This document shows, one piece after another, positions 39,341-64,000 of a stretch of 64,000 nt of DNA; the stretch's first letter is position 1; each line of letters starts with the position of its first letter. Source of the stretch: Lepidodermella squamata. Taxonomy: Eukaryota; Animalia; Gastrotricha. The translations under genes and the position numbers were made by a program. Location of the stretch: assembly GCA_047495785.1 (NCBI GenBank), contig JBLDXI010000046.1, positions 1,757,301 through 1,821,300 on the forward strand, in the 5' to 3' direction. Below the pieces are notes generated by a model that was not told the DNA's origin, searched no databases, and saw only the letters and a list, made by a program, of their open reading frames with translations.

Positions 39341-39682
39341 TCCACTTTTGTAAATTTACTTGCTCATTTTTTTCGCTTAATAAGTTACCCGCTGAATACG
39401 ATTAGCATATCGAGGTGCCCCTTTCGTTGTGCGAAAGCGGAATAGGTAATTAACTATGAGCACTTTTTACCTCCGGTTGAAAGCCCTTGAAAAACATTGT
39501 GGTTAATAGCAATCATGGAGCCACTAATCTAGTGCTGCTAAAAGTTCTGTTTTGGATCTACATTATAGGCTTTCCCATAAGCTTACTCTAATAATTAATT
39601 ACCAATATTGTTTTTACCTAGACAATTTATCAATTTTTTGGGCTCTTTGATATCGAGGCAGAAGACGATCGATACATTGGAA

Positions 39683-42526: not shown

Positions 42527-43255
42527 GGGGTTAGGGTTAGTATGGTTAGTGCTACGGTCCTTCGGTTCAATGTATTGTAAATTTTCAAGCAAAACTTTCC
42601 ACCCCGTGACCAAATTGTCACGGAGGTTCGTGCTGGTCATTGAGGCGCAGGCTTGACGCCACGCGTTGACGAATTCTTCGCGCGGTTCGCCGAGGTTGAT
42701 GCCGCGGGCCTTGCGGATGACCGAAACGGAGCTGCCTTGACCGCAGACGCTGTTGAAGGCGCGAGCGGTGTAGAGCGGTAGCGAGTCGGGGTCGCAGTAG
42801 CGGAACGCTTGCGACGCGTCCTTGTAGGCGAAGTACGCGGCACCTGCGTGAACCCAGCCGGAGCGGAGACGAAGCGAGGTGACGGTGGCGGCGGCGAAAA
42901 TGTCCCGTTCTTCAACGACTTTCGGGTCGTCGAGCGAGTCTGTAGGAAAGAATTTGTGCATGCCATTAATAAAATTTCTCTCATGTGGCGTGTAGCCGCC
43001 GCTGTTCACGGCCGTGCTAATGCGCGCACGAATAATAAAATGATTAATGAATGATGCAAGCTTGGCCTGATATCGCTCGAGGATATCGTGACGGTGCTGC
43101 TGATCGAGGCGTTGACGACGATCGATGGGCGGTGGTGGCGGAGGCGGCGGTGGCGCGTTTTTCGGAGCACGATTGCTCGACGCGTAGCGGTCTTCGCGGT
43201 AGCGGTAGCGGTCTTCGCGGTCTTGATGACGGTCTTCACGGTACTGGCAACAGTC
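42527..43255 (-). mobile_element. Fragment of a second, divergent family of the telomere-associated Penelope-like element (ORF1 N-terminal domain only)
   Basis: The frame is open across the fragment and aligns by eye to ORF1 at 56152-58647: QHRHDILERYQAKLASFINHFIIRARISTA vs EHRQDLLDRFREKLNNFIHHFFILAKLATA; T.HE..KFFP; DA.QA..YC.P; R.FN.V; V.RK; GW; DRS...NPN. Confidence 0.85.
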
Positions 43256-43293
43256 GGGGTGGGTTAGGGTTAGGGTTAGGGTTAGGGTTAGGG
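43256..43293 (+). repeat. Interstitial telomeric tract (TTAGGG)5 capping the fragment
   Basis: ggggtgggttagggttagggttagggttagggttaggg directly abuts the 5'-truncated end of the ORF1 fragment. Confidence 0.92.
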
Positions 43294-50000: not shown

Positions 50001-52358
50001 CGCATATTTACATAATTACTTTATAAGCCTTCAAAAATGATTTCCGCTCGAGCAATACAAATTAAAAATCTGGCTCATCTTTTTTAAGGAAATTTGGGTA
50101 CTAGAATTTGTAAAAGTTGAGTGATCTCAACATTAGGGTTAGGACATAGAGAACAGAGGAACAACAGGGGACACTCCAACTAAAATTTGATGCAAAAATT
50201 GTATCTCAAAACGGTGTCCCTCCGATTTTGACGCCCGTTTGCAAGCTGATAGAACTAGTTTTGAACTTTAAAAATCCGAGCGGACAGGTCCAGAAACGTA
50301 TTGGCCTTAAAGCAACTTAATGTTGTCTTTGCTACACTACTGATTTCCTATATAAATTTAATAATAAAAATTTTCAATAATTTTTTTCTCGATAATATAC
50401 AATATCTGGGAGCTTTGTAGCGGATAGCGGAAAATATTCGCCTGAAGGCCGCTATTGCGACCATCGGCTGCGCCTCAGGTCTCCATAGCTTGCCTTCAGG
50501 CGAATATTTGACCTATCCGCGTAAAAGCTTTCAGATATAGTTGTTATCCGGATCACTATCCCCGACTATCCTCCCGAAACACTATCCAACCTAAAATTAT
50601 GCATCAAAGTTGCAAAAGCGAATGATTTTCAAACGCTAATCATTCCTCATTTTTTCTCTACGATTTGAAATTGATTTTTTCACGCCCGTCCGCATCAACA
50701 TGGATCGCATCAATTTCGGGCAAAACGGAAAGCCTATCTCTCGAATCGCGAATTCAGCCGTTCAATCTTAGGGCTGCTAATACGCAAGAAGATCAGTCAA
50801 CCAGCCAGTCACCCAGCGATGATGGCAGCGAAACGGTGTCGGCTGGGGACTTGTTTGCTGTAACATCCTCTCTTGGCGCCACACCGATTCTCGAGTTGAT
50901 GTGAGCCCGCCCCAGAGCAAGATCGAGCGCAAGTTGCTGCTGGCTCAAGTCTCTAAGCAATCGGCGATGATTCTTGGCTCCGGTGGATTTTCTGCTGAAT
51001 CAAACCTGATCCAACAACCAAAATGACTTGGCCCACTTGTTCCCTTGTCTTTGCTGCATATCCTTTAACCTTAATTTTTTCGCAATTACGGAAGAATAAA
51101 ATTTAGGGGTCGCGAGGGTTTCGGCACCTCAGTATTTCGTGATATTTCCGTGCTCAAATAAATCGAAAATAGGGGTGAATTCTGCCAAAATTTCGAGCCA
51201 TGACCTGAGTTTAAATCAGCCCGGATAGCGTGATATCCTGGCTCAAACAGCCCGGGATAGCAAAGAATATTCCGGGCTGTTTTACGGCATATTTTCCACT
51301 ATGATCCGGATAACCATTATTAATTTTAATAAAAAATCAACTCAAAAATGATATTTTGCTTCAAACTTTTGTTCTGATTTTCCTCTCTTGTTCCTCTGTT
51401 CTCCATGGGTTAGGAAACCCGGATAATTTTCGCACGAATACCTCAACGTGTGCCTTATTTACAATTCCCTTTCGCGCAGCCCCCATCGTATCAGAAATTT
51501 CCAAAGACCATGCGTCCGCCATGTAGTAGAGCCCAAGAATTGTCGCTGTTTCAAACCAGTTCATAAATACCCGAAATAAAGAGCAAATAATTAGATACCC
51601 AACTGTTTATTCCGAGCGGCCTTGTCATGGTGACTCTTGCATAGCTGAATGGCTTCACTCACGTCCGTGTAGTGGTAGTACTCGAATGGATACGCAGTAA
51701 CGCAAGAAAACAACTGACGACTGGTAGCTCCCAGAGTTCCGCCGATGAAAACTTTCGCCTCATATAACTCAGATTTCGCTAAATCATAGTCATGTTCATA
51801 GAAGGGGCCAAATTTTTCAATTACGTAATCCGGCTCCTCGGCTATTGAGACGTCCACAGAGCTGCTGATCTTACTAGAACCCAACCCTTCTACCGACAAT
51901 CTTAGTGCGATAAAGTAGAATCTCGCCTGCCTTATTCTCCACAAGATCGGAATTTTCCTATTCCCCGCGTCTGATAGAATTAGCTTCTGGCTATTTGAAT
52001 CGAACAAAATTGAGAAAAACGTGTTTTTCTGCCGCTCAACTGCCAAAATCCCAACGTCAACACTCGTGGACTCGGTGAAGAAGAATAAGGAAACGATAAG
52101 TTTCTGTGTTTGGCCTTTGGGTAAGCTGTAAATAGCCAGAGTTTCATTTAGTCCGGTCATAACTGACGTTGACAAGTATTCAAATGGTCCGCTTATCGAT
52201 TTGTTGATACTTAGATCACTGGCTTGGCTGATGAGTTTAGCACGCCCAGTTACTTCTTTCGTTTTAGACTCCATGTCAAATGGCAGAAATAAGGTGGTCT
52301 CCAGGGCCAATGCTCCAGGGTGAAATGTCAGAAATACGAACAATAAAATAGTTCTCAT
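44065..52358 (-). CDS. Receptor tyrosine kinase (Met/Axl-like kinase domain) with an unusual ectodomain; exon joining of the ectodomain is tentative
   Basis: Kinase motifs GHGTFG, VAVKT, HRDLACRNILV, DFGLSR, PLRWYPPES, KSDVWSFG, and terminal exon CWKCPETERPSF (stop 44065). TM segment at ~45500-45575. Upstream same-strand exons carry a signal peptide (52358) and two similar LamG-like blocks. Confidence 0.75.
49713..49911. mobile_element. Tc1/mariner (pogo/Tigger-like) MITE, 199 bp, in an RTK intron
   Basis: Perfect 23-bp TIR CAGTGAAACCCCGATTTGGCGTC / GACGCCAAATCGGGGTTTCACTG, flanked by TA on both sides. Confidence 0.9.
50390..51315. mobile_element. Putative non-autonomous DNA element with a long palindrome and inverted repeats
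   Basis: ~150-bp imperfect palindrome at 50390-50548 (GCGGATAG..AAATATTCGCCTGAAGGC ... GCCTTCAGGCGAATATTT..CTATCCGC), plus a 13-bp inverted repeat GTTATCCGGATCA (~50543) / TGATCCGGATAAC (~51303). Confidence 0.55.
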
Positions 52359-52580
52359 TACGTGAATCGCTCAAAATCGGATACTGAAATAACATGAATA
52401 ATAACCAATGTTAATTACCAACATGTTACGTGCCTTCAGCTTCATTTGCGAGATTTTATCAGCTCTGACCAAGTGATGTGCAATAAGACCATATGTCAGG
52501 TAGCGATATTTTTTGGTGTGCCAACTGCACCTCTTAAAAATAAGGTTCCAGCACTAAATTTGAAAGTCACTCGCACTAAT

Positions 52581-52731
52581 GGGGTTAGGGTTAGGGTTAG
52601 GGTTATTGGTAATAGTTTAATGGGGTTAGGGTTAGGGTTAGGGTTTGGGGTTAGGGTTGGGGTTAGGGTTAGGGTTAGGGTTAGGGTTAGGGTTAGGGTT
52701 AGGGTTAGGGTTAGGGTTAGGGTTAGGGTTA
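52581..52731 (+). repeat. Telomeric (TTAGGG)n tract, proximal anchor of the retroelement array
   Basis: Two TTAGGG runs with TTGGGG/TTTGGGG variants, separated by a short spacer (~52605-52621). Confidence 0.95.
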
Positions 52732-53702
52732 ATTAGTAAGCTGCGGTCCGCCTGTATTTTGTTTTGCGCAAGGTGATAAGTAAAAGCCTGCCAGCCCTTC
52801 GTAACGTTGGTGAGCAAGTCAGGGCTGCGCATGGCGCGTTTCATTTCGTTGCAGGCGCATTGAAATTGTTCGTAGATCGCCGGCCAGTAGATGTTGCTCG
52901 ACTTGCGCAGGACTCGTAGCACGCTGTTGCTGCTCGCGACAGTGTTGAAGACCCGCGACGTTTGGGCCGCTCTGTCCGACGGATGGCAGTAGTTTGCTGC
53001 TTGGCGTGCATCGGTGAACGCACTTTCGAGAGCTTGCTCGTGTCCTGTCATGGATTTATGACGTATCTCGGAAACAACATTGTAAAAAAGCAAATCAACG
53101 ATGCCCTGAGTGCTAGCTTCGAACCGATGCTCGCGCGGGAAGAACTTCTCGAGCACTGGCCGGAGTGCCTTCTCGTGAGCGGTGGTGGGTCTCTCGTTTT
53201 GAGGTTTGGCGTAGTCTTCACTGAAGTTGGCTGTGGCGAGCTTGGCTAAAATGAAGAAATGATGAATAAAATTGTTGAGTTTCTCGCGGAAGCGATCGAG
53301 GAGATCTTGTCGATGTTCCCTCGCTCGACGTTGCCCTTCTGCTGCTGCCTTAGAAGGTAGCTGCCCGTTGTCCGTTGAGTCTTGCGGTCGCTTCGTACCA
53401 TCCGCGTGCCGACGGTCTGACTGAGCGTTCGAACCAGACCCGTGCGAGCGACTGGAGCGGCCGTGCGTAGCACCCTCGTGCGAACGGTAAGATCGAGTGT
53501 TCGAACTGGACGCTGCTGCGGAGACTGTCTGTTTCGAGCGGCTTTGATGACGATCGCGCCGTTCTTGTTGATAGGGCGGATTGTGACGACTCGAGTTGTA
53601 ATAGACGTAGCGGAAGCGGCCAAAGATGGCCCGTCCCGGGCGGTCGTTGTTAATTTCTGTAAACCCGTTGTTATTAGAAACAAAACGGTTACGGTTAGAC
53701 AT
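52638..53702 (-). CDS. ORF1 truncated at the telomere junction, reading into telomeric repeats as poly(Asn-Pro), 354 aa
   Basis: Identical to the ORF1 N-terminus up to ...DRSLLINPN, then (NP)n from CCCTAA repeats. Confidence 0.7.
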   Translation of the reverse strand: MSNRNRFVSNNNGFTEINNDRPGRAIFGRFRYVYYNSSRHNPPYQQERRDRHQSRSKQTVSAAASSSNTRSYRSHEGATHGRSSRSHGSGSNAQSDRRHADGTKRPQDSTDNGQLPSKAAAEGQRRAREHRQDLLDRFREKLNNFIHHFFILAKLATANFSEDYAKPQNERPTTAHEKALRPVLEKFFPREHRFEASTQGIVDLLFYNVVSEIRHKSMTGHEQALESAFTDARQAANYCHPSDRAAQTSRVFNTVASSNSVLRVLRKSSNIYWPAIYEQFQCACNEMKRAMRSPDLLTNVTKGWQAFTYHLAQNKIQADRSLLINPNPNPNPNPNPNPNPNPNPNPNPNPNPKP

Positions 53703-53711
53703 AATGAGATT

Positions 53712-53750
53712 TATTGGTAGACCGGTTTCACTATTTCTTCAGTACCAATA
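53712..53750 (-). ncRNA. Minimal type I hammerhead ribozyme, copy 1
   Basis: Minus strand TATTGGTA-CTGAAGA-AATAGT-GAAA-CCGG-TC^TACCAATA: 8-bp helix I, intact core CUGANGA/GAAA/GUC, vestigial helix II, palindromic ACCGGU helix III. Confidence 0.9.
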
Positions 53751-54479
53751 TCATACTTCTGATAGAATTATAACGAGTGACATTATTGTGACAGCGCTAT
53801 GATAACACCGTACCAGGTGCGTGTGCCTCGGACTATGTTAGGCGCAGCGGATTAGGATTACAAGGTGTTGTTTCGCGCACACGTGTTACTAAGTTCAAGT
53901 TAACTACGGCAGGTGTGCGTCTAGGTGTGCGCACTATATCGGATTAGCGCACAGATGTTGTGGCCACTACTTGTTGATCGGTGATTCTAGCCAAATGGGT
54001 AACAAGGTGTGCTACTAGGCTGGCGAGGCCTTGATGACGAGCTAACGTGACATCTGTGCTGTTGAGAGACGACAATTACAATGATGAAGATGACCAATAG
54101 AAGATTGACAGCTGACGCAAGGCGTTATTGCCGGCGACATCAAGGTATTGAAAGCAATAAAAGTCATAAAACAGGATATGCCGATTCTAAGGTCGTTATC
54201 GACTTTGGATCTCGCTGCGGGTTACTGGTTGATACCAGGATGGCTTGGCCGCCGTGGTCGTGCGCGACTATGACTCGCTGACGTCCAGAACATTAGACCT
54301 CGCTGCGGGTTACTGGCCGATACCGCGTTGAACAGGCTATAAAACATGAATGGAGAAACATATAATACTGCGTAATGGTGGTAATTAATCTAATGAATTA
54401 ATTAAGAATAATTAATAAACGGTCGGTAGCTTTGTTGCTACTCTTGACATCGTCGCTGGCTACTGGTCGATTGGTTCGG

Positions 54480-56306
54480 CTAGCAGTCTTTCGTTCGGCA
54501 GAGTTGCTTGACAACGCTTGGACCGAGTCGGGTGACGAGACGAATGCGTCGCCGGCGTGCGATGTCGTACAGTGGCTGTAGTGGCCGAACGAACTTCGTT
54601 TCGACCGGTGGTCGCCAGTCTTGTTGGTAGCGAAAGTTGTCGACACGATTGCGTAGGAACGGCCAGTCTTGACCTTCGCAACTTGTGATGACGTCGTGGG
54701 CGAGCGCAAAAACATCTGCGTCGACGTAGCCGTACTTGGACGCGGAACTGGCGAGGCTAAAAATGGCAGAACACAAGTCTTCTGTATTATTGCAAATTCT
54801 TAAAAAGTTTAAAATGCGCCCTGTGACTGCGGCCCGGAGAGTCGATTCTGGGTGATTGGAGTCAGCGTGTAAGAGAGGCAACGAGTTCATGGGCTTGAAG
54901 TAAACGCCGGTTCTGATGGAGCCATCGGGGTACTTGCTCAGGCGGACGTCGAGAACATTCGCACGCTCGGAGCTGATCTCGACTTCGAGCTTTATACGTG
55001 GATGTAGTGCGCCGTATTCGTTGCCTAGCGTGACTGCGGCCTCTTGAGTGGTGCAGATTGCGAAGACGTCGTCTCGATACCGTTTGAACAACATCACGTC
55101 GGTTTGGCGTTCGACCAGATCGCGCTCGAGCACATAGAGGAACGCGTCCGCTACGACTGGGGCACTGTTGGAGCCCATCGGAATTCCGTGCACCTGACGA
55201 TACTGAATGCCTGAAAAATAGAAAATGTTTGAATTAAGTGTTATTTCGAGCATTGCGACGACGAGGTCGCGTTCGGGTGCGGTTCCGATTGCGTTCTCGT
55301 CCAACATGGTCTTGATCGCTGCGATTCCTTCTCCAATCGGTACGTTGGTGTACAAGTCGCTCACGTCTGCGGTAAAGAACGTGACGTCGCACCCGCTTGA
55401 GTCGATTGCGCGAACAGCGTGTAGTAGGTCGATGGTAGACGAGGCACAGGTAGTCATGAACCGGTTAAGCGGTTTGCAGTAAGCTGCGGCGACCTTGTCT
55501 GCGGCGGCGAGCGCTGTGCCCAAACAGTCGACAATCGGCCGAATTTTCGGTAGACCATCTACGTCAAATGCCTTGTGCATTTTTGGTAAAAAATAAATAT
55601 GACGATCGCGGGTTGGCTCGAGATCGAGCCCGCGTAACAGCTTGCGTTGTGCGGCTGTACCGGTTGCCATAACGCGGTCGACGAGAGTCTTCATTGCTTC
55701 GAGGCCTCGCTTCTCTTCTGATTCTTCGGCGTGCACATAGTTCGCTGTAGTGAGATGTTTGAGCGCCATTTTCGAGTAGTTCGCCTTTGACATGTAGACC
55801 ATCGCTGCACCTTTGTCAGATTTCTTGAATACGCCGTCTTTGCGGAGGGCGCGTAATCGTCGTAGCTGTGGGTCGTCGACGATGGGACCGAGCCGTACTG
55901 TGCGAGCTGGCTGTGCGTGGCGGATAACGACTTGTCCGTGGATCCCGATAATCGGACCAACGAAGCGCTTTGAGAACGCTACAGAGGGAACCTTGACGTC
56001 GAGGCCGTGGTCGGGACGAGGGACGACGGTTGCGCCAAGGAGATCTGAAATGACATTAACACAGGCAATTTTATCTTTTTTCGTGAAATTAATGATTTTA
56101 AGGCCACGCTCGAGTGCCTGTTTCTCGGCTGGCTGGAGAGTTCCCGTCAGGTCAACGACGGACGGTAGAGAACAGCGATGCAGCGTCCCGTACGCTCCGT
56201 TTTGGACTAGGGATGGGATGGCCCTGAGCCCGAGCGATCCCGCGAAACCGCGACGCGATGTCTGCGTGTCTGTCTCCTTTTTCGTGCTTCTCGCGGATGT
56301 GTGTGA
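54480..56306 (-). CDS. Penelope-type reverse transcriptase, copy 1 (stop-to-stop frame; first ATG at 55802)
   Basis: VVDLTGTLQPAEKQALERGL (PLE N-terminal motif), KKSDKG, YFLPKMHK, RPIV, ADVSDLYTNVP, QVHGIPMGSNSAP, YRDD, thumb YFKP...SNHP. Confidence 0.95.
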   Translation of the reverse strand, partial: SHTSARSTKKETDTQTSRRGFAGSLGLRAIPSLVQNGAYGTLHRCSLPSVVDLTGTLQPAEKQALERGLKIINFTKKDKIACVNVISDLLGATVVPRPDHGLDVKVPSVAFSKRFVGPIIGIHGQVVIRHAQPARTVRLGPIVDDPQLRRLRALRKDGVFKKSDKGAAMVYMSKANYSKMALKHLTTANYVHAEESEEKRGLEAMKTLVDRVMATGTAAQRKLLRGLDLEPTRDRHIYFLPKMHKAFDVDGLPKIRPIVDCLGTALAAADKVAAAYCKPLNRFMTTCASSTIDLLHAVRAIDSSGCDVTFFTADVSDLYTNVPIGEGIAAIKTMLDENAIGTAPERDLVVAMLEITLNSNIFYFSGIQYRQVHGIPMGSNSAPVVADAFLYVLERDLVERQTDVMLFKRYRDDVFAICTTQEAAVTLGNEYGALHPRIKLEVEISSERANVLDVRLSKYPDGSIRTGVYFKPMNSLPLLHADSNHPESTLRAAVTGRILNFLRICNNTEDLCSAIFSLASSASKYGYVDADVFALAHDVITSCEGQDWPFLRNRVDNFRYQQDWRPPVETKFVRPLQPLYDIARRRRIRLVTRLGPSVVKQLCRTKDC

Positions 56307-58647
56307 TCAGACCATTGATTGAGCAGCTCTTGCCGACGTGGCCGCATCGTTTGCCGCTCGGTAGCTTGAAAGCGCACGACCACTTGCCGTTGTGAAACTC
56401 GACGAGTATCGACGGATCGCGTATCTTTTCTTTCTTCCACCATTCGCGGGTGAACTCTGCTTTGCTCAAGTTCTTCTGTATGGCGTAGTCTTGCTTTGAT
56501 AGCGTGGTCGTCGTATCACCCTGCTCTTGACGGACCGACTGAGCGTTCGAACCGTGCATCGGTGGGTTGTGCGCAGGCGGTCGCGATGCCGGTGCCAGGC
56601 GTTTGAGACACGTTCCGGGTTGCCCGTACATTTGTTGCGCCGAGATCGCTTTGACGACGGCGGGCTTCTTGGACGGCGCCGGAAGTTCTGTTGGTGACTT
56701 GTCTTTCGGGCTGGTGGCACGAGCTCGCTTGGTGGGCACCGAGGCGTTTGGCGCACCTGGTCGAGGAGCGTTCTGCGAGACCGCGTTGATCGCTTCACCG
56801 AAGAACGAGGCGACCGAGCTGACATCTGAAATAGAATTGCAATTATTAAAACGAGATTCGACATTGGCTGCAGCTGCTGCTAGCGCGGTGTCGCTGGCAC
56901 TGTCGATCGGTGAAGCGTCCTTGCTCGGAGTCTGAGGCAGAGGCGCGGACGTGGGCGTTAACTGGGCTGCTGTCGATTTGTCGGCAGTGACCGTTTGTGG
57001 AGTAGCCGGGCGGGCTACATTGATAGTCGTTGAGTGGTCGGCGGTCGCCGCTGAATCGCGGCTGCCACCGTTCTTGGTAACCAAGTTGCTAGCTTCAGAA
57101 GTTGACCGAGCGGTAGTCGACGCTGAACCGCGACTGTCAACGCTCTTTGAGACCAAGTTGCTAGCTTCAGAAGTTGACCGAGCGGTAGTCGACGCTGAAC
57201 CGCGACTGTCATCGCTCTTTGAGACCGAGTTGCTAGCTTCAGAAGTTGACCGAGCGGTAGTCGACGCTGAACCGCGACTGTCATCGCTCTTTGAGACCAA
57301 GTTGCTAGCTTCAGAAGTTGACCGTGCGGGAATCGAGGCCAAATCGCGACCGAGACCTCTCTTCGGTACCAGTGCGTTGATCTGAGCGGTTGAACGTGCG
57401 GAAATCCAGGTCGAATCGCGTTCTTCTGTGGTGAGCAAGCCCCAATCACCCGGGCTCGGATGGCCAGTCTGAGCGGTTGAACCGGGAGCCGCCTTGGGTG
57501 TCGGTGGTAACGCTTGACGAGCTGTTTCTGATTGACCTGTCGGCGTAACCGGATTGACGGCCGGGTCGCTTACGACCATCGGCGACGAAGACTGAATGGT
57601 GTCGTGCGCTTCAACTGTTATGTTGACAGGTGCTTCCCTTGGGGAGGCATGGACCTGAGAAAGAGAGTTAGGGTTAATTAGTAAGCTGCGGTCCGCCTGT
57701 ATTTTGTTTTGCGCAAGGTGATAAGTAAAAGCCTGCCAGCCCTTCGTAACGTTGGTGAGCAAGTCAGGGCTGCGCATGGCGCGTTTCATTTCGTTGCAGG
57801 CGCATTGAAATTGTTCGTAGATCGCCGGCCAGTAGATGTTGCTCGACTTGCGCAGGACTCGTAGCACGCTGTTGCTGCTCGCGACAGTGTTGAAGACCCG
57901 CGACGTTTGGGCCGCTCTGTCCGACGGATGGCAGTAGTTTGCTGCTTGGCGTGCATCGGTGAACGCACTTTCGAGAGCTTGCTCGTGTCCTGTCATGGAT
58001 TTATGACGTATCTCGGAAACAACATTGTAAAAAAGCAAATCAACGATGCCCTGAGTGCTAGCTTCGAACCGATGCTCGCGCGGGAAGAACTTCTCGAGCA
58101 CTGGCCGGAGTGCCTTCTCGTGAGCGGTGGTGGGTCTCTCGTTTTGAGGTTTGGCGTAGTCTTCACTGAAGTTGGCTGTGGCGAGCTTGGCTAAAATGAA
58201 GAAATGATGAATAAAATTGTTGAGTTTCTCGCGGAAGCGATCGAGGAGATCTTGTCGATGTTCCCTCGCTCGACGTTGCCCTTCTGCTGCTGCCTTAGAA
58301 GGTAGCTGCCCGTTGTCCGTTGAGTCTTGCGGTCGCTTCGTACCATCCGCGTGCCGACGGTCTGACTGAGCGTTCGAACCAGACCCGTGCGAGCGACTGG
58401 AGCGGCCGTGCGTAGCACCCTCGTGCGAACGGTAAGATCGAGTGTTCGAACTGGACGCTGCTGCGGAGACTGTCTGTTTCGAGCGGCTTTGATGACGATC
58501 GCGCCGTTCTTGTTGATAGGGCGGATTGTGACGACTCGAGTTGTAATAGACGTAGCGGAAGCGGCCAAAGATGGCCCGTCCCGGGCGGTCGTTGTTAATT
58601 TCTGTAAACCCGTTGTTATTAGAAACAAAACGGTTACGGTTAGACAT
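56152..58647 (-). CDS. Full-length ORF1 of the Penelope-like element, 831 aa (basic N-terminus, conserved helical domain, S/T/A-rich linker, C-terminal C2H2/BED-like zinc finger)
   Basis: Intact ORF directly upstream of and overlapping the RT frame; WSCAFKLPSGKRCGHVGKSCSINGLITHIREKH; homologue at 42527-43255. Confidence 0.85.
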   Translation of the reverse strand: MSNRNRFVSNNNGFTEINNDRPGRAIFGRFRYVYYNSSRHNPPYQQERRDRHQSRSKQTVSAAASSSNTRSYRSHEGATHGRSSRSHGSGSNAQSDRRHADGTKRPQDSTDNGQLPSKAAAEGQRRAREHRQDLLDRFREKLNNFIHHFFILAKLATANFSEDYAKPQNERPTTAHEKALRPVLEKFFPREHRFEASTQGIVDLLFYNVVSEIRHKSMTGHEQALESAFTDARQAANYCHPSDRAAQTSRVFNTVASSNSVLRVLRKSSNIYWPAIYEQFQCACNEMKRAMRSPDLLTNVTKGWQAFTYHLAQNKIQADRSLLINPNSLSQVHASPREAPVNITVEAHDTIQSSSPMVVSDPAVNPVTPTGQSETARQALPPTPKAAPGSTAQTGHPSPGDWGLLTTEERDSTWISARSTAQINALVPKRGLGRDLASIPARSTSEASNLVSKSDDSRGSASTTARSTSEASNSVSKSDDSRGSASTTARSTSEASNLVSKSVDSRGSASTTARSTSEASNLVTKNGGSRDSAATADHSTTINVARPATPQTVTADKSTAAQLTPTSAPLPQTPSKDASPIDSASDTALAAAAANVESRFNNCNSISDVSSVASFFGEAINAVSQNAPRPGAPNASVPTKRARATSPKDKSPTELPAPSKKPAVVKAISAQQMYGQPGTCLKRLAPASRPPAHNPPMHGSNAQSVRQEQGDTTTTLSKQDYAIQKNLSKAEFTREWWKKEKIRDPSILVEFHNGKWSCAFKLPSGKRCGHVGKSCSINGLITHIREKHEKGDRHADIASRFRGIARAQGHPIPSPKRSVRDAASLFSTVRR
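57080..57325 (-). repeat. 72-bp (24-aa) in-frame tandem repeat in ORF1, ~3.4 copies; same repeat at 62025-62270
   Basis: ARSTSEASNLVSKSDDSRGSASTT repeated; CAAGTTGCTAGC at 57082 and 57154 gives the 72-bp spacing. Confidence 0.92.
57667..57676 (-). other. Internal telomere-complementary site (RNA 5'-UAACCCUAAC-3') within ORF1; putative primer-annealing site
   Basis: GTTAGGGTTA at 57667-57676 corresponds exactly (offset 4945) to the telomere/element junction at 52722-52731. Confidence 0.85.
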
Positions 58648-58656
58648 AATGAGATT

Positions 58657-58695
58657 TATTGGTAGACCGGTTTCACTATTTCTTCAGTACCAATA
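58657..58695 (-). ncRNA. Minimal type I hammerhead ribozyme, copy 2
   Basis: Identical to 53712-53750; predicted cleavage between 58665 and 58664, 17 nt upstream of the ORF1 ATG (58647). Confidence 0.9.
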
Positions 58696-59424
58696 TCATA
58701 CTTCTGATAGAATTATAACGAGTGACATTATTGTGACAGCGCTATGATAACACCGTACCAGGTGCGTGTGCCTCGGACTATGTTAGGCGCAGCGGATTAG
58801 GATTACAAGGTGTTGTTTCGCGCACACGTGTTACTAAGTTCAAGTTAACTACGGCAGGTGTGCGTCTAGGTGTGCGCACTATATCGGATTAGCGCACAGA
58901 TGTTGTGGCCACTACTTGTTGATCGGTGATTCTAGCCAAATGGGTAACAAGGTGTGCTACTAGGCTGGCGAGGCCTTGATGACGAGCTAACGTGACATCT
59001 GTGCTGTTGAGAGACGACAATTACAATGATGAAGATGACCAATAGAAGATTGACAGCTGACGCAAGGCGTTATTGCCGGCGACATCAAGGTATTGAAAGC
59101 AATAAAAGTCATAAAACAGGATATGCCGATTCTAAGGTCGTTATCGACTTTGGATCTCGCTGCGGGTTACTGGTTGATACCAGGATGGCTTGGCCGCCGT
59201 GGTCGTGCGCGACTATGACTCGCTGACGTCCAGAACATTAGACCTCGCTGCGGGTTACTGGCCGATACCGCGTTGAACAGGCTATAAAACATGAATGGAG
59301 AAACATATAATACTGCGTAATGGTGGTAATTAATCTAATGAATTAATTAAGAATAATTAATAAACGGTCGGTAGCTTTGTTGCTACTCTTGACATCGTCG
59401 CTGGCTACTGGTCGATTGGTTCGG

Positions 59425-61251
59425 CTAGCAGTCTTTCGTTCGGCAGAGTTGCTTGACAACGCTTGGACCGAGTCGGGTGACGAGACGAATGCGTCGCCGG
59501 CGTGCGATGTCGTACAGTGGCTGTAGTGGCCGAACGAACTTCGTTTCGACCGGTGGTCGCCAGTCTTGTTGGTAGCGAAAGTTGTCGACACGATTGCGTA
59601 GGAACGGCCAGTCTTGACCTTCGCAACTTGTGATGACGTCGTGGGCGAGCGCAAAAACATCTGCGTCGACGTAGCCGTACTTGGACGCGGAACTGGCGAG
59701 GCTAAAAATGGCAGAACACAAGTCTTCTGTATTATTGCAAATTCTTAAAAAGTTTAAAATGCGCCCTGTGACTGCGGCCCGGAGAGTCGATTCTGGGTGA
59801 TTGGAGTCAGCGTGTAAGAGAGGCAACGAGTTCATGGGCTTGAAGTAAACGCCGGTTCTGATGGAGCCATCGGGGTACTTGCTCAGGCGGACGTCGAGAA
59901 CATTCGCACGCTCGGAGCTGATCTCGACTTCGAGCTTTATACGTGGATGTAGTGCGCCGTATTCGTTGCCTAGCGTGACTGCGGCCTCTTGAGTGGTGCA
60001 GATTGCGAAGACGTCGTCTCGATACCGTTTGAACAACATCACGTCGGTTTGGCGTTCGACCAGATCGCGCTCGAGCACATAGAGGAACGCGTCCGCTACG
60101 ACTGGGGCACTGTTGGAGCCCATCGGAATTCCGTGCACCTGACGATACTGAATGCCTGAAAAATAGAAAATGTTTGAATTAAGTGTTATTTCGAGCATTG
60201 CGACGACGAGGTCGCGTTCGGGTGCGGTTCCGATTGCGTTCTCGTCCAACATGGTCTTGATCGCTGCGATTCCTTCTCCAATCGGTACGTTGGTGTACAA
60301 GTCGCTCACGTCTGCGGTAAAGAACGTGACGTCGCACCCGCTTGAGTCGATTGCGCGAACAGCGTGTAGTAGGTCGATGGTAGACGAGGCACAGGTAGTC
60401 ATGAACCGGTTAAGCGGTTTGCAGTAAGCTGCGGCGACCTTGTCTGCGGCGGCGAGCGCTGTGCCCAAACAGTCGACAATCGGCCGAATTTTCGGTAGAC
60501 CATCTACGTCAAATGCCTTGTGCATTTTTGGTAAAAAATAAATATGACGATCGCGGGTTGGCTCGAGATCGAGCCCGCGTAACAGCTTGCGTTGTGCGGC
60601 TGTACCGGTTGCCATAACGCGGTCGACGAGAGTCTTCATTGCTTCGAGGCCTCGCTTCTCTTCTGATTCTTCGGCGTGCACATAGTTCGCTGTAGTGAGA
60701 TGTTTGAGCGCCATTTTCGAGTAGTTCGCCTTTGACATGTAGACCATCGCTGCACCTTTGTCAGATTTCTTGAATACGCCGTCTTTGCGGAGGGCGCGTA
60801 ATCGTCGTAGCTGTGGGTCGTCGACGATGGGACCGAGCCGTACTGTGCGAGCTGGCTGTGCGTGGCGGATAACGACTTGTCCGTGGATCCCGATAATCGG
60901 ACCAACGAAGCGCTTTGAGAACGCTACAGAGGGAACCTTGACGTCGAGGCCGTGGTCGGGACGAGGGACGACGGTTGCGCCAAGGAGATCTGAAATGACA
61001 TTAACACAGGCAATTTTATCTTTTTTCGTGAAATTAATGATTTTAAGGCCACGCTCGAGTGCCTGTTTCTCGGCTGGCTGGAGAGTTCCCGTCAGGTCAA
61101 CGACGGACGGTAGAGAACAGCGATGCAGCGTCCCGTACGCTCCGTTTTGGACTAGGGATGGGATGGCCCTGAGCCCGAGCGATCCCGCGAAACCGCGACG
61201 CGATGTCTGCGTGTCTGTCTCCTTTTTCGTGCTTCTCGCGGATGTGTGTGA
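59425..61251 (-). CDS. Penelope-type reverse transcriptase, copy 2 (first ATG at 60747)
   Basis: Translation identical to copy 1. Confidence 0.95.
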   Translation of the reverse strand, partial: SHTSARSTKKETDTQTSRRGFAGSLGLRAIPSLVQNGAYGTLHRCSLPSVVDLTGTLQPAEKQALERGLKIINFTKKDKIACVNVISDLLGATVVPRPDHGLDVKVPSVAFSKRFVGPIIGIHGQVVIRHAQPARTVRLGPIVDDPQLRRLRALRKDGVFKKSDKGAAMVYMSKANYSKMALKHLTTANYVHAEESEEKRGLEAMKTLVDRVMATGTAAQRKLLRGLDLEPTRDRHIYFLPKMHKAFDVDGLPKIRPIVDCLGTALAAADKVAAAYCKPLNRFMTTCASSTIDLLHAVRAIDSSGCDVTFFTADVSDLYTNVPIGEGIAAIKTMLDENAIGTAPERDLVVAMLEITLNSNIFYFSGIQYRQVHGIPMGSNSAPVVADAFLYVLERDLVERQTDVMLFKRYRDDVFAICTTQEAAVTLGNEYGALHPRIKLEVEISSERANVLDVRLSKYPDGSIRTGVYFKPMNSLPLLHADSNHPESTLRAAVTGRILNFLRICNNTEDLCSAIFSLASSASKYGYVDADVFALAHDVITSCEGQDWPFLRNRVDNFRYQQDWRPPVETKFVRPLQPLYDIARRRRIRLVTRLGPSVVKQLCRTKDC

Positions 61252-62522
61252 TCAGACCATTGATTGAGCAGCTCTTGCCGACGTGGCCGCATCGTTTGCC
61301 GCTCGGTAGCTTGAAAGCGCACGACCACTTGCCGTTGTGAAACTCGACGAGTATCGACGGATCGCGTATCTTTTCTTTCTTCCACCATTCGCGGGTGAAC
61401 TCTGCTTTGCTCAAGTTCTTCTGTATGGCGTAGTCTTGCTTTGATAGCGTGGTCGTCGTATCACCCTGCTCTTGACGGACCGACTGAGCGTTCGAACCGT
61501 GCATCGGTGGGTTGTGCGCAGGCGGTCGCGATGCCGGTGCCAGGCGTTTGAGACACGTTCCGGGTTGCCCGTACATTTGTTGCGCCGAGATCGCTTTGAC
61601 GACGGCGGGCTTCTTGGACGGCGCCGGAAGTTCTGTTGGTGACTTGTCTTTCGGGCTGGTGGCACGAGCTCGCTTGGTGGGCACCGAGGCGTTTGGCGCA
61701 CCTGGTCGAGGAGCGTTCTGCGAGACCGCGTTGATCGCTTCACCGAAGAACGAGGCGACCGAGCTGACATCTGAAATAGAATTGCAATTATTAAAACGAG
61801 ATTCGACATTGGCTGCAGCTGCTGCTAGCGCGGTGTCGCTGGCACTGTCGATCGGTGAAGCGTCCTTGCTCGGAGTCTGAGGCAGAGGCGCGGACGTGGG
61901 CGTTAACTGGGCTGCTGTCGATTTGTCGGCAGTGACCGTTTGTGGAGTAGCCGGGCGGGCTACATTGATAGTCGTTGAGTGGTCGGCGGTCGCCGCTGAA
62001 TCGCGGCTGCCACCGTTCTTGGTAACCAAGTTGCTAGCTTCAGAAGTTGACCGAGCGGTAGTCGACGCTGAACCGCGACTGTCAACGCTCTTTGAGACCA
62101 AGTTGCTAGCTTCAGAAGTTGACCGAGCGGTAGTCGACGCTGAACCGCGACTGTCATCGCTCTTTGAGACCGAGTTGCTAGCTTCAGAAGTTGACCGAGC
62201 GGTAGTCGACGCTGAACCGCGACTGTCATCGCTCTTTGAGACCAAGTTGCTAGCTTCAGAAGTTGACCGTGCGGGAATCGAGGCCAAATCGCGACCGAGA
62301 CCTCTCTTCGGTACCAGTGCGTTGATCTGAGCGGTTGAACGTGCGGAAATCCAGGTCGAATCGCGTTCTTCTGTGGTGAGCAAGCCCCAATCACCCGGGC
62401 TCGGATGGCCAGTCTGAGCGGTTGAACCGGGAGCCGCCTTGGGTGTCGGTGGTAACGCTTGACGAGCTGTTTCTGATTGACCTGTCGGCGTAACCGGATT
62501 GACGGCCGGGTCGCTTACGACC
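61097..62522 (-). pseudogene. 5'-truncated ORF1 of the distal copy
   Basis: Matches 56152-57577, then switches abruptly to GGGTTAGGG at 62523. Confidence 0.88.
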
Positions 62523-62561
62523 GGGTTAGGGTTAGGGTTAGGGTTAGGGTTAGGGTTGGGG

Positions 62562-62602
<41 letters not shown>

Positions 62603-62700
62603 GGTTAGGGTTAGGGTTAGGGTTAGGGTTAGGGTTAGGGTTAGGGTTAGGGTTAGGGTTAGGGTTAGGGTTAGGGTTAGGGTTAGGGTTAGGGTTAGGG

Positions 62701-62741
<41 letters not shown>

Positions 62742-62810
62742 GGTTAGGGTTAGGGTTAGGGTTAGGGTTAGGGTTAGGGTTAGGGTTAGGGTTAGGGTTG
62801 GGTTAGGTTA
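62523..62810 (+). repeat. Telomeric (TTAGGG)n tract, ~290 bp, capping the 5'-truncated end of the array
   Basis: Continuous TTAGGG with occasional TTAGGGG/TTTAGGG/TTGGGG variants; non-telomeric DNA resumes at ~62811. Confidence 0.96.
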
Positions 62811-63791
62811 ATTACCAGACGGGAAGCCTAAGCAACCCCGGCATAAAAGCTCTAGCGATCCCTTTCACTCTAGCAACGGTGAGAGGAGAGTAAACCACTT
62901 TTTAATCTGTGGATTAGCAGCAGAGTAAGGTGATGGGCTAAACCGATTTCAATGATCAATTGAAATAAAGGTTGAACGTAAGTCGTGCGTGGAACCATAA
63001 CTTAAAGTTCCATCCAGACAAAAGCCTTAATTGAACCCGAACCATAAGATTGAGGTTAACCGATTGACTCCACATTTGGATTAGTAGTGAGCTATGTCAG
63101 TACCGCATCTAGGGTTTGTTGGTATCGTAGTCCCGGGAACAACCATTAGTGTGGTCATTAGACTCACTACACTCATGAACGATCAATTGACTGTGCGTGC
63201 ACAGGCAATGACGACGGATTGGAATCATTCTATGATCCACTGATGCTTAGACTTTCCCACAACAGACAGTAAAAAGTTGATATAAGTTTGTTGTAACTAG
63301 GGTAGAGATTATCAAACTGTCATCTATCGTTTGTATGTAGAGAGTTCGAGGATGAAATATCTTATCCAGCGACAGGAGTAAGAAACCTCGATTCAAAGGA
63401 ACACGATGGACAACAACATATCGGATGTCTCGGACTACTAAACGAGATGATCTCAATAGAGACCAATAGACAATGACGCATGTTGTGTATTTAGAAACCA
63501 TGGCCAGAGAACAGTGAACTTTAACAGTTAACACTAAAGCTGCAAATACACTGAGTAGTGAACCTTAACTCTTAGCCTGTAGCCTGCGGCTAATTAACTT
63601 TAAAGCATGTCAACTCTTGGAAATAGGCCAAGTTCAAGCAAAATATTACGAAAATTATATCAAATCTTGAAAGAATTTCGCGCCAGAACCCACATGGCAC
63701 TAACATTTAAAGAACGTAAGATAACGCGGTTTGTAAGGCCGTGCTTTGGAGAAATTCTGTCATTCGAGTGGATTTTGTTTTGAGCAACTAA

Positions 63792-63845
63792 AGTCACTGA
63801 TGAGCCTGCTGCCCACAGGCGAAACCGGTCTGACTATTCTGGGCG
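63792..63845 (+). ncRNA. Type I hammerhead ribozyme of a different family, with a possible loop II pseudoknot
   Basis: AGTCA-CTGATGA-GCCTG-CTGCCCA-CAGGC-GAAA-CCGG-TC^TGACT; helix I 5 bp, helix II 5 bp, palindromic helix III; loop TGCCCA complementary to downstream TGGGCG (63840-63845). Confidence 0.9.
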
Positions 63846-64000
63846 TTGCGTATTTTCCATCGTTTACTTGTGATATCCTGGGCCATCCTTCCATGGGTGG
63901 TGCTTTTCCTTGTTGCTCCCCTCAATGGGTGGCTTGTACTCATTGTGCTCCCCTATACGGGTGGCATTTCATGTTTGCTCCCCACTCTCACGAGATGTGT

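What the first reader, a model, noticed from the sequence alone, without database searches (positions are those of the whole stretch)
57667..57676. Telomerase-template-like priming site hidden in the ORF1 coding sequence (Asn-Pro-Asn)
Seen: the element RNA contains UAACCCUAAC in the codons for (I)NPN, and the array is fused to the telomeric tract at exactly this decamer (52722-52731). The site lies at the boundary between the conserved ORF1 domain and the low-complexity linker. Established: the vertebrate telomerase template is CUAACCCUAAC, and PLE RTs are the closest retroelement relatives of TERT. In Athena elements the telomere-complementary stretch is described near the 3' terminus. Inference: this is a dual-coding site, both peptide and primer-binding. 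It raises the question of whether the RT could itself copy telomeric repeats from this ~1.5-repeat template.
Basis: partly seen in the sequence, partly recalled or inferred. Interest (0 to 1): 0.9.

Follow-up and report, generated by a model that had tools for sequence, protein, structure and literature searches.

The report
Telomere-docking site encoded inside retroelement ORF1
A ten-base stretch complementary to the chromosome-end repeat sits inside a retrotransposon's first gene (read as Asn-Pro-Asn), is kept letter for letter in very distant relatives, and is the exact point where every copy is joined to telomere repeats, so it most likely docks the element's RNA on chromosome ends to start copying.

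Summary
TAACCCTAAC (minus strand, 57676-57667) encodes (I)NPN in an intact 831-aa ORF1 of an endonuclease-less Penelope-like element, in a head-to-tail array at a contig end. The array joins (TTAGGG)n exactly at this decamer (52722-52731).

- At least 10 telomere-to-element junctions with different proximal flanks all fall at the homologous site. They come from three or four diverged families in this genome and one foreign contig.
- In all 9 lineages with an internal copy (ORF1 only 18-36% identical), the site is T-AAC-CCT-AAC in the same frame with open ORF on both sides. Three further lineages keep a 9-10-nt complement shifted by 2 nt. The invariant core is TAACCCTA.

New here:
- A covarying 7-bp hairpin lies 18-23 nt 3' of the decamer.
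- A probable enclosing stem displays the decamer in a loop, so the functional RNA seems to extend past the site (internal priming).
- A covarying minimal hammerhead lies just upstream of the ORF1 AUG.

In PLE terms the decamer ends the retrotransposed unit, and ORF1 is rebuilt across partial tandems. The verdict is a new variant of the known Athena/Coprina telomere-attachment mechanism. Telomerase-like repeat synthesis by the RT is untested. The scan had already noted the homologous junction of the second family (42530).

The parts
57667..57676 (-). Internal telomere-complementary decamer TAACCCTAAC. It is the last base of the Ile codon plus the Asn-Pro-Asn codons of ORF1, and it marks the boundary between the two tandem units.
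52722..52731 (-). The same decamer at the point where the array is joined to the proximal (TTAGGG)n tract, taken as the cDNA start point.
42530..42539 (-). Isolated decamer ending a 5'-truncated ORF1 N-domain fragment of a diverged family (about 32% aa identity). It is followed by CC and then non-element sequence. The fragment is capped distally by the telomere tract 43261-43293.
56152..58647 (-). ORF1, 831 aa. It comprises a conserved N-domain, the NPN site, a low-complexity linker with 24-aa repeats, and a C-terminal Cys/His zinc-finger-like domain. It spans the unit boundary.
57690..57694 (-). 5' arm (GGACC) of the proposed stem that encloses the decamer in a 34-nt loop.
57651..57655 (-). 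3' arm (GGUCC) of the proposed enclosing stem.
57632..57648 (-). 7-bp hairpin (GCCUCCC-CAA-GGGAAGC) 18 nt 3' of the decamer. It encodes the 'SPRE/APRA' peptide motif and covaries across lineages.
58657..58695 (-). Minimal hammerhead-like motif: helix I, CUGAAGA, an A/U-rich linker, GAAAC, the CGGU palindrome and GUC. It lies 17 nt upstream of the ORF1 AUG. A second copy is at 53712-53750.
   Evidence: not found by Rfam
54480..56306 (-). Open frame of the Penelope-like reverse transcriptase (608 codons, first ATG at 55802, no endonuclease domain). It overlaps the end of ORF1 in another frame. A second copy is at 59425-61251.
52732..53702 (-). Terminal copy of the ORF1 N-domain (ATG at 53702). 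It ends at the decamer/telomere junction.
57677..62522 (-). Upstream (telomere-distal) unit. It is identical to 52732-57577 and 5'-truncated 89 nt after the decamer position.
52582..52731 (+). Proximal (TTAGGG)n tract to which the array is attached. It contains a 20-nt abortive fragment of another PLE family's 3' end at about 52606-52625.
62523..62807 (+). It is followed distally by the 3' end of a different PLE family (type B).

Best explanation
What it is. The decamer is the conserved docking and primer-alignment site of a clade of endonuclease-less, telomere-attaching Penelope-like retroelements (called 'type A' here). The host is a eukaryote with TTAGGG telomeres.

Shown:
- The element RNA (minus strand) carries UAACCCUAAC inside ORF1, read as Asn-Pro-Asn.
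- Every genomic copy that abuts a telomere tract begins exactly there and runs towards the RNA 5' end. Copies are of variable length, up to nearly two units, and the distal end is capped by new TTAGGG repeats.
- The sequence is invariant at synonymous positions across very divergent lineages.

Inferred:
- The 3' G-rich overhang of an uncapped chromosome end base-pairs with the decamer.
- The decamer is held single-stranded in a roughly 31-37-nt loop closed by a lineage-specific stem. It sits next to a conserved 7-bp hairpin that may position the RT.
- The element's RT extends the overhang along the RNA, and RNA 3' of the decamer is not copied.
- Telomerase later caps the new end.

Consequence. 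Because copying starts inside ORF1, a single unit is circularly permuted: ORF1 C-part, RT, spacer, hammerhead, ORF1 N-part, decamer. An intact ORF1 exists only when the cDNA exceeds one unit. This is the usual PLE partial-tandem (pseudo-LTR) design, with a terminal repeat enlarged to hold about 325 codons. The template must therefore be a read-through multi-unit RNA, a template jump, or a hammerhead-processed circular RNA. Which of these applies is not resolved.
For: 1. Junctions. There are 11 telomere-tract-to-element junctions at the homologous site, with different proximal flanks. They are the main family in C46, C21, C54 and C20; the C57/C21b family twice; the C20/C41 family three times; window 42530; and foreign contig L061. 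No type A junction falls elsewhere.

2. Orientation. The element lies distal to the tract on the G strand, and the window, C20, C41 and C54 are at contig ends. This fits extension of a G-overhang and does not fit telomerase healing.

3. Invariance. TAACCCTAAC lies in the NPN frame at the same place in 9 of 9 lineages with an internal copy. ORF1 is open for at least 250 codons before the site in the seven lineages whose contig reaches the ORF1 start, and for 144-504 codons after it in all but L066 (31). These are the only 10 fully invariant consecutive columns in the nucleotide alignment. From the ORFs' own codon usage, P(AAC CCT AAC | NPN) is 0.14 per lineage, or about 1e-7 for 8 lineages. Three other NPN tripeptides in the same ORFs use CCC, CCG or CCA for Pro. 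Lineages L148/L062 keep CCTAACCCTA, a 10-nt complement shifted by 2 nt; L147 keeps only the 8-nt core TAACCCTA followed by CC.

4. Read level. X1 contigs branch only at 57667, into a telomere path and a through path.

5. RNA structure. In the hairpin 3' of the site, 82.5% of cells are paired against 62% in shuffles (0 of 500 reach it), 4 of 7 pairs have compensatory changes, and slid controls give 24-49%. The enclosing stem has different sequences but the same geometry in four independent lineages, Fisher P about 1e-3.

6. Contrast. Other PLE families in the same genome, and outgroup contigs, have the classical non-coding 3' end directly abutting telomere repeats.

7. Co-variation with host telomere. 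In a distant family from a TTTAGGG-type host, the in-frame ORF1 repeats switch to AACCCTAAA (20-30 copies against 0-2).

8. Literature. EN-deficient PLEs are proposed to anneal reverse-complement telomeric stretches to G-overhangs (PMC8557442, PMC6431247, PMC13159263).
Against: - No RNA data exist for this organism. RNA ends, internal versus terminal position of the site in the template, and translation of the 831-aa ORF1 are all unshown.
- No biochemical evidence of priming exists.
- The four main-family junctions are 98.7-100% identical copies. They could partly reflect exchange within telomere tracts rather than four separate retrotranspositions.
- The enclosing stem is only moderately supported; the 5-bp stems of the closest lineages are individually not significant.
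- The hairpin lies in coding sequence and was derived from the same alignment on which it was tested.
- Outgroup L067-69 keeps AACCCTAAC in ORF1 although its telomere junction lies at a non-coding 3' end. The ORF1 motif may therefore have, or have had, a further role.
Confidence: 0.73

Rival explanations
1. DNA-level recombination. Junctions at the decamer arise by microhomology-mediated events between telomere repeats and the internal 10-mer, without reverse transcription from that site. Candidate events are break-induced replication from an invading telomere end, or deletion between a proximal tract and the decamer.
For: Ten bases of perfect homology to the telomere exist at the site. Arrays on C46, C21 and C54 are near-identical and share distal context. 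Subtelomeres exchange segments frequently (general knowledge).
Against: The same arrays hold long telomere tracts that would be far better recombination partners than a 10-mer. Diverged families and a foreign contig each have their own junction at the homologous site, with variable distal truncation and de novo caps; this is the signature of 5'-truncated cDNAs. Recombination does not explain invariance of synonymous sites over lineages with 18-36% protein identity, nor the covarying RNA structure.
Confidence: 0.06
2. DNA-level telomere function. The embedded repeat works as double-stranded DNA, either as a binding site for telomere-repeat-binding proteins or as a seed for telomerase when the end erodes into the array. 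It would not work as an RNA docking site.
For: The G strand carries GTTAGGGTTA in the orientation in which erosion from the end would expose a telomerase-competent 3' end. Outgroups carry up to 10 in-frame repeats inside ORF1. L067-69 keeps the ORF1 motif although it attaches through a different 3' end.
Against: No copy is capped at the decamer on its distal side. Caps lie 89 nt away or elsewhere, whereas all proximal junctions are at the decamer. The adjacent covarying hairpin and stem point to an RNA-level role. This function could co-exist with priming.
Confidence: 0.08
3. Protein constraint plus codon bias. Asn-Pro-Asn is needed by the ORF1 protein, AAC and CCT are simply common codons, and the junctions are microhomology coincidences.
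For: AAC makes up 74% of Asn codons in these ORFs. The NPN and downstream 'APR' peptide motifs are conserved.
Against: CCT is only 26% of Pro codons, yet it is used at the site in every lineage. The preceding residue varies (I, T, V, F, C, S), yet its third base is always T. Other NPN tripeptides use other Pro codons. The 'APR' motif covaries as an RNA helix with correlated amino-acid changes on both sides. Eleven junctions at one site are not coincidence.
Confidence: 0.03
4. The decamer is simply the 3' terminus of the element RNA, as described for classical Athena. The long ORF1 across tandem units would be a by-product rather than a functional gene read through the site.
For: All cDNAs start at the decamer. 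PLE terminal repeats are known to include the ORF start (PMC3846280). No RNA data are available.
Against: ORF continuity across the site is conserved in 9 lineages, with conserved sequence on both sides. The C-terminal part has no start of its own directly after the site. The structure elements that covary lie 3' of the decamer and need both flanks, so a functional RNA spans the site.
Confidence: 0.1

Closest known systems
Athena / Terminon endonuclease-deficient Penelope-like elements of bdelloid rotifers (Gladyshev & Arkhipova 2007; Arkhipova et al. 2017; as summarised in PMC6431247 and PMC8557442)
   Same: EN-less PLE RT and two ORFs. Located at chromosome ends in head-to-tail arrays. 5'-truncated ends face the telomere and are capped by telomeric repeats. 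A short reverse-complement telomeric stretch marks the 3' boundary and is proposed to anneal to the G-overhang. A minimal hammerhead motif is present.
   Different: In Athena the (ACACCC)n stretch lies immediately downstream of the 3'-terminal hammerhead in non-coding sequence. Here about 1 kb encoding the ORF1 N-domain lies between the hammerhead and the stretch. The stretch is a single 10-mer read as Asn-Pro-Asn inside a conserved ORF, flanked by a covarying stem and hairpin. The host repeat is TTAGGG. The clade of the RT (Athena versus Coprina) was not determined, and the two primary papers could not be read.
Coprina elements (fungi, diatom, Selaginella, shrimp; e.g. Coprina-1_Alen, PMC13159263)
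   Same: EN-less PLEs at TTAGGG-type telomeres, flanked by telomeric repeats on both sides, with direct terminal repeats. The same model applies: RNA-telomere homology, then the element's RT, then telomerase capping.
   Different: Coprina elements usually have one ORF. The telomere homology is described at the element end, not inside a coding region.
Pseudo-LTR (partial tandem) organisation of canonical Penelope elements (PMC3846280)
   Same: The terminal repeat contains the promoter region and the first codons of the ORF (12-22 aa in Pen2a_Av). A functional copy therefore needs more than one unit, and a unit is permuted relative to the gene.
   Different: Here the repeat holds about 325 codons, a whole protein domain. 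Its 3' edge is defined by a telomere-complementary sequence rather than by endonuclease-dependent TPRT.
Template region of telomerase RNA (vertebrate CUAACCCUAAC)
   Same: About 1.5-1.7 C-strand repeats lie internal to an RNA. The stretch is proposed to be single-stranded within a helix-closed loop, and it is used to align the G-strand 3' end for an RT of the TERT/PLE lineage.
   Different: There is no evidence for a template boundary, translocation or reiterated copying. Synthesis runs on for kilobases into the element. The sequence similarity follows automatically from complementarity to TTAGGG.

Membership tests
Endonuclease-deficient telomere-associated PLE (Athena/Coprina kind) | Penelope-like reverse transcriptase (DKG region, RT motifs 1-7, thumb) | tested here: met
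   RVT_1 scores 26.7-27.6 bits, just under the cut-off. DKG, IRPIV, ADVSDLYTNVP, GIPMGS and YRDD motifs are seen in the translation. Homologues carry PF28514/PF26215, and one distant homologue carries GIY-YIG. No phylogeny was made, so the clade is unassigned.
Endonuclease-deficient telomere-associated PLE (Athena/Coprina kind) | No GIY-YIG endonuclease domain | tested here: met
   The RT frame ends after the thumb and is followed by about 780 nt rich in stops. Pfam finds no endonuclease in any ORF of the unit.
Endonuclease-deficient telomere-associated PLE (Athena/Coprina kind) | At chromosome ends, with 5'-truncated ends telomere-oriented and capped by telomeric repeats | tested here: met
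   The window ends contig C46. Sister arrays lie at the ends of C54, C20 and C41. Orientation and caps are as expected.
Endonuclease-deficient telomere-associated PLE (Athena/Coprina kind) | Reverse-complement telomeric stretch at or near the 3' end of the copied unit | tested here: met
   The decamer is the 3' boundary of every copy, but it lies inside ORF1.
Endonuclease-deficient telomere-associated PLE (Athena/Coprina kind) | Telomeric stretch immediately downstream of the 3'-terminal hammerhead (Terminon/Athena description, PMC6431247) | tested here: not met
   The hammerhead-like motif is present once per unit, but about 1 kb upstream of the decamer, before the ORF1 AUG.
Hammerhead ribozyme (minimal PLE type) | Core CUGANGA...GAAA...NUH with helix I, and a short palindromic helix III allowing dimers | tested here: inconclusive
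   The core, the palindromes ACCGGU/ACGCGU/ACUAGU and helix I are present. Helix I has 74 of 80 cells paired against 36.8 in shuffles. No helix II can be drawn and Rfam gives no hit at E<=1. Cleavage is untested.
Telomerase RNA-like template | 1.5 or more repeats complementary to the telomere, internal to the RNA | tested here: met
   There are 10 nt, or 1.67 repeats. Structure elements on both sides suggest an internal position.
Telomerase RNA-like template | Reiterated copying with a template boundary and translocation | not testable with these tools
   This needs a biochemical assay. The only indirect hints are variable repeat number among related outgroup elements and the duplicated site in L060/L064.

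The most novel reading that the evidence does not exclude
The decamer-in-a-loop plus adjacent hairpin is a telomerase-RNA-like module carried by a protein-coding retroelement RNA. The element's TERT-related RT would not only start there but could realign and copy the 1.67-repeat template reiteratively, adding telomere repeats itself. Alternatively, it would copy a hammerhead-processed circular RNA in rolling-circle fashion, which would explain cDNAs longer than one unit. Either case would give a living intermediate between telomere-attaching retroelements and telomerase.
Probability: 0.08. Interest if true: 0.92.

Novelty: new variant of a known kind. Interest (0 to 1): 0.62.

Why it matters
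EN-deficient PLEs are the retroelements closest to telomerase, and how they engage chromosome ends rests on sequence inference alone.

This clade offers an unusually sharp handle for experiments:
- a single invariant 10-mer with dual peptide and RNA function;
- a defined cDNA start point;
- a covarying hairpin and loop-closing stem next to it;
- a hammerhead that may define the RNA.

Together these make the docking model directly testable with a short RNA, a telomeric oligonucleotide and recombinant RT.

The finding also shows overlapping constraints: a nucleic-acid signal dictates a conserved tripeptide, and an RNA helix dictates an 'APR' peptide motif.

It explains why these elements appear circularly permuted at telomeres. 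In-frame telomere repeats inside ORF1 also occur in distant EN-less PLE families and follow the host's repeat type, which suggests the arrangement is old and general.

Tried and rejected
- Rfam scan of 52000-64000 at E<=1 gave nothing. The hammerhead-like motif was found only by eye and pattern search.
- Pfam on ORF1 parts gave no domain.
- A word-based protein search with the ORF1 N-part found nothing. The exhaustive HMM search found 9 relatives.
With the RT alignment it returned only distant PLEs (22-31% identity), which served as outgroups.
- The primary papers PMC1890498 and PMC5850863 are not held. Whether ORF1-embedded repeats were already described there could not be checked.
- No RNA run exists for the organism, so expression and RNA ends could not be examined.
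- An unconstrained 'longest stem around the site' test was not significant for the 5-bp stems. Only the geometry-constrained test across independent lineages gave P about 1e-3.
- TTAGG-host contigs (L113, L092) have classical non-coding 3' ends and no type A ORF1, so they give no co-variation test for type A itself.
- Assembly artefact was rejected.
- Telomerase healing at the decamer was rejected on orientation.
- The organism was not identified.
Telomere tracts themselves were not sent to collection searches.
Full report
**1. Observation**

The + strand at 57667-57676 is gttagggtta, so the minus strand carries TAACCCTAAC. The minus-strand ORF 58647->56152 (831 aa) reads ...QADRSLLINPNSLSQVHASPREAP... 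at this place. The decamer is therefore the last base of an Ile codon followed by AAC-CCT-AAC.

At 52722-52731 the same decamer ends a degenerate (TTAGGG)n tract (52582-52731). It is followed by the same element sequence.

An in-register comparison shows that 52732-57577 and 57677-62522 are identical. The period is 4945 bp. The second unit stops 89 nt short of the next decamer position and is followed by (TTAGGG)47.

The decamer is expected 0.08 times by chance in the window. Outside telomere tracts it occurs only at 57667 and 42530.

**2. What the element is**

The window is the last 64 kb of contig C46 of a 121-Mb eukaryotic assembly.

Read on the minus strand, a unit contains the following, in order:
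- ORF1;
- a 608-codon open frame that overlaps the end of ORF1 in another frame and carries PLE-type RT motifs (KSDKG, IRPIV, ADVSDLYTNVP, GIPMGS, YRDD), with RVT_1 just under the cut-off and no endonuclease domain;
- about 780 nt full of stops;
- the next ORF1 AUG.

Homologues of the RT (35-62% identical) occur on 2-5-kb metagenomic or Logan contigs.

The G-rich strand is the + strand and the contig end lies to the right. The element therefore lies distal to the tract it is joined to, with its RNA 3' side towards the centromere. Its truncated 5' side faces the telomere and is capped. This is the arrangement described for EN-deficient PLEs (PMC3846280, PMC8557442).

**3.

They do not.

- Main family. 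The telomere tract is followed by unit position 1 in C46, C21, C54 (98.7% identical copy) and C20. Each has a different proximal flank.
- C57/C21b family. ORF1 is about 32-36% identical and the RT 75%. It shows the same junction twice, plus an intact 701-codon ORF1 with an internal decamer.
- Third family. It occurs at C20:12377, C20:16850 and C41:1723, with three more junctions.
- Window 42530. The fragment ends at an isolated decamer plus CC, next to unrelated sequence.
- Foreign contig L061. It ends ...SSKSNPNPNPNPN in telomere repeats.

The copied lengths vary: 731 nt, about 1.8 kb, 2065 nt, about 4.7 kb, about 6.0 kb (one unit plus the ORF1 N-part plus about 270 nt) and 9.8 kb. This is what 5'-truncated cDNAs look like.

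Other PLE families in the same subtelomeres have different, non-coding 3' ends directly abutting the repeats:
- type B: ...cccgtctggtaattaacctaaccc|;
- type C...gctcgtctgtattaaa...|.

The specificity therefore belongs to the element and not to the region.

Logan contigs of run X1 break only at 57667. A 48-nt contig carries GTTAGGGTTAGGGTTAGG before 57667 (word depth 65.5). A 402-nt contig runs through the site (47.3).

**4. Test 2: synonymous constraint**

I fetched contigs for RT homologues and later for ORF1 homologues.

In all nine lineages where the site is internal (window, C57, L057, L058/59, L060, L063, L064, L065, L066), TAACCCTAAC lies at the same place and in the same frame. It sits about 10 codons after the conserved ...GW... 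block of the N-domain. ORF1 is open for 144-504 codons beyond it, except in L066, which is broken 31 codons later.

- The ORF1 N-domains are only 18-36% identical.
- The residue before NPN varies (I, T, V, F, C, S), but its third base is always T.
- In the nucleotide alignment the decamer is the only run of ten invariant columns.
- With the codon usage of these same ORFs (AAC 74% of Asn, CCT 26% of Pro), the chance of AAC-CCT-AAC given NPN is 0.14 per lineage. That is about 1.5e-7 for eight lineages, and far less if the preceding T is counted.
- Three other NPN tripeptides in these ORFs use CCC, CCG and CCA.
- L060 and L064 carry two decamers two bases apart (NPNNNPN). L058 has 13 nt.
- L148/L062 read CCTAACCCTACC (P-N-P-T), a 10-nt complement shifted by two bases. 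The more distant L147 (TTTAACCCTACC) keeps the core TAACCCTA plus one 3' base (9 nt in all). The invariant core is TAACCCTA.

**5. New: RNA structure around the site**

*Hairpin.* RNAalifold on +/-50 nt predicts a 7-bp hairpin 18-23 nt 3' of the decamer. Examples are GAAGCCC/GGGCUUC, GAGGCCC/GGGCCUC, GUACCUC/GGGGUAC, GGUUCCC/GGGAACC and GGCUC/GAGCC.
- 82.5% of cells pair, against 61.9% in shuffles (0 of 500 reach it).
- The covariation score is 0.51 against 0.18.
- Slid controls give 24-49%.
- The hairpin encodes the 'APRA/SPRE/PPRG' motif. The amino acids on the two sides change in a correlated way, which argues for selection on the RNA.

*Enclosing stem.* In the window sequence the minimum-energy fold puts the decamer in a 34-nt loop closed by GGACC/GGUCC.
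- Other lineages have a stem of different sequence but the same geometry: GUGGUUGU/ACAACCAC, AGUUGUG/CACAACU and GAGAGGC/GCCUCUC. L066 has AGACC/GGUCU.
- The 3' arm ends 0-6 nt before the hairpin.
- A geometry-constrained shuffle test gives P = 0.02-0.04 for the long stems. Fisher P is about 1e-3 over four independent lineages.
- An unconstrained test is not significant for the 5-bp stems.
- I regard the hairpin as well supported and the enclosing stem as probable.

*Implication.* Both elements need sequence 3' of the decamer, and that sequence is never present at junctions. This suggests the working RNA extends past the site and that priming is internal.

**6. Hammerhead**

All type A lineages have, once per unit and 17-160 nt upstream of the ORF1 AUG, this motif: helix I, CUGA(A/U)GA, an A/U-rich 4-7-nt linker, GAAAC, (CG|GC|UA), GU(C/U), helix I'.

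Helix I pairs in 74 of 80 cells, against 36.8 with shuffled partners (0 of 5000). The segment after GAAA is a palindrome (ACCGGU, ACGCGU, ACUAGU). This is the feature that lets minimal PLE hammerheads act as dimers (PMC7761336).

No helix II can be drawn, and Rfam does not report the motif.

In Athena/Terminons the telomeric stretch follows the hammerhead immediately (PMC6431247). Here the ORF1 N-domain (about 1 kb) lies between them.

**7. How it most likely works**

Shown: cDNAs begin at the decamer, the site is under nucleotide-level constraint, and ORF1 is conserved across it.

Inferred:
- A deprotected G-overhang pairs with the looped decamer.
- The RT extends it towards the RNA 5' end.
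- Telomerase caps the product.

Because copying starts about 975 nt into ORF1, a single unit is permuted. A functional ORF1 arises only if more than one unit is copied, as in C57 (one unit plus the N-part plus about 270 nt) and in the window (1.98 units). This is the PLE partial-tandem design, in which the terminal repeat already contains the first 12-22 codons of the ORF (PMC3846280). Here it is enlarged to about 325 codons.

The template for cDNAs longer than one unit may be read-through RNA from arrays, a template jump, or circular RNA made by hammerhead cleavage and ligation. The data do not decide among these.

**8. Outgroups**

Distant EN-less PLEs (RT 22-27% identical) show that coding telomere repeats are not unique to this clade.
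- L067-69 have a canonical order: ORF1, RT, 1-kb 3' UTR, then telomere. Their ORF1 still carries AACCCTAAC (...TKNPNLFPGQGAPRTQW...), and the RT ends in an (NP)n tail made of C-strand repeats.
- L126, L129, L130, L134 and L143-146 carry 3.5-10.5 in-frame AACCCT repeats in the middle of a 600-900-codon ORF upstream of the RT. The number varies between close relatives.
- In a family whose contigs end in (CCCTAAA)n, the in-frame repeats are rich in AACCCTAAA (Asn-Pro-Lys): 20-30 copies in its contigs that span the repeat-rich ORF1 region, against 0-2 in TTAGGG-type families. The embedded repeats therefore follow the host telomere type.

**9. Rivals**

- Recombination at the 10-mer, a DNA-level role (protein binding or telomere seeding), protein constraint with codon bias, and a plain 3'-terminal position are weighed in the Rival explanations section.
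- None of them explains all three of these together: the one-sided junction pattern, the invariant synonymous sites, and the covarying RNA elements on both sides.
- A DNA-level role may co-exist with priming.
- The telomerase-like reading (reiterated copying) has no direct support. The duplicated site in L060/L064 and the variable repeat number in outgroups are equally explained by slippage.

**10. Comparison and novelty**

The kind is known: Athena/Coprina-type telomere attachment through a reverse-complement telomeric stretch.

The variant is new as far as the accessible literature shows:
- the stretch is a single invariant decamer inside a conserved ORF;
- it is separated from the hammerhead by a protein domain;
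- it is flanked by a covarying hairpin and a loop-closing stem.

The two primary papers could not be read, so prior description cannot be excluded.

**11. Limits**

- The organism is unidentified.
- There are no RNA data and no biochemistry.
- Several main-family junctions may not be independent events.

Noticed in passing
window 52606-52625: Inside the proximal telomere tract lies a 20-nt island (RNA sense ...cattaaactattaccaa|TAACCC). It equals the last 20 nt of another PLE family's 3' end (type C, compare L055:703-722). It looks like an abortive, extremely 5'-truncated cDNA that was re-capped by telomerase.
   Followed up: partly
window 62800-62940; also C20:15800-15932 and C57: A different element (type B) ends ...gccggggttgcttaggcttcccgtctggtaattaacctaaccc directly against (AACCCT)n. 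This is a classical non-coding telomere-attaching 3' end, shared by at least four chromosome ends.
   Followed up: partly
window 58657-58695 and 53712-53750 (minus strand): A minimal hammerhead-like motif lies 17 nt upstream of the ORF1 AUG. It is conserved in all 10 type A lineages, with strongly covarying helix I (74 of 80 cells paired) and a palindromic helix III. It has no helix II, and Rfam does not detect it.
   Followed up: yes
window 55803-56306 (minus strand): The RT frame is open for 168 codons upstream of its first ATG and overlaps the last ~50 codons of ORF1 in another frame. This suggests frameshifting or reinitiation.
   Followed up: no
window 57044-57350 and 61989-62295: There are 4.3 tandem copies of a 72-nt unit (24 aa, ...TTARSTSEASNLVSKSDDSRGSAS...) in the ORF1 linker. 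They also break the short-read contigs of run X1.
   Followed up: no
L027+L028 (C21:2655001-2674224) and L029+L030 (C54:4281812-4301811): Both contig ends carry an inverted duplication of the array (unit forward, then the same unit reversed). This is either a fold-back palindrome at the chromosome end or a long-read assembly artefact.
   Followed up: no
L068:3560-3660 (also L067, L069): In a distant EN-less PLE the RT ORF ends in ...HEDNPNPNPNPNPNPNLYPNPNHNPNPNPIPT*. This tail is made of degenerate telomere C-strand repeats read in the Asn-Pro frame.
   Followed up: partly
L132, L133, L135, L139: A PLE family from a host with (TTTAGGG)n telomeres carries long in-frame runs mixing AACCCTAAC and AACCCTAAA (NPN/NPK) inside ORF1. 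Pure 7-mers would create stop codons, so the repeats are interrupted.
   Followed up: partly
C20:16884-16915 and C54:4289115-4289134 (L029:7304-7323; from L031/L032, L029): Several proximal elements begin, right after their telomere cap, within a few bases of a CUGAUGAG hammerhead core (...ccctgaggtttgaagtcaCTGATGAGctacc). Full-length RNAs of those families may therefore start near a ribozyme.
   Followed up: no
window 39608-42352 (+): A 914-codon ORF lies immediately proximal to the 42530 element fragment. Another note of the scan calls it an ADP-ribosyltransferase toxin-like protein. It was not examined here.
   Followed up: no
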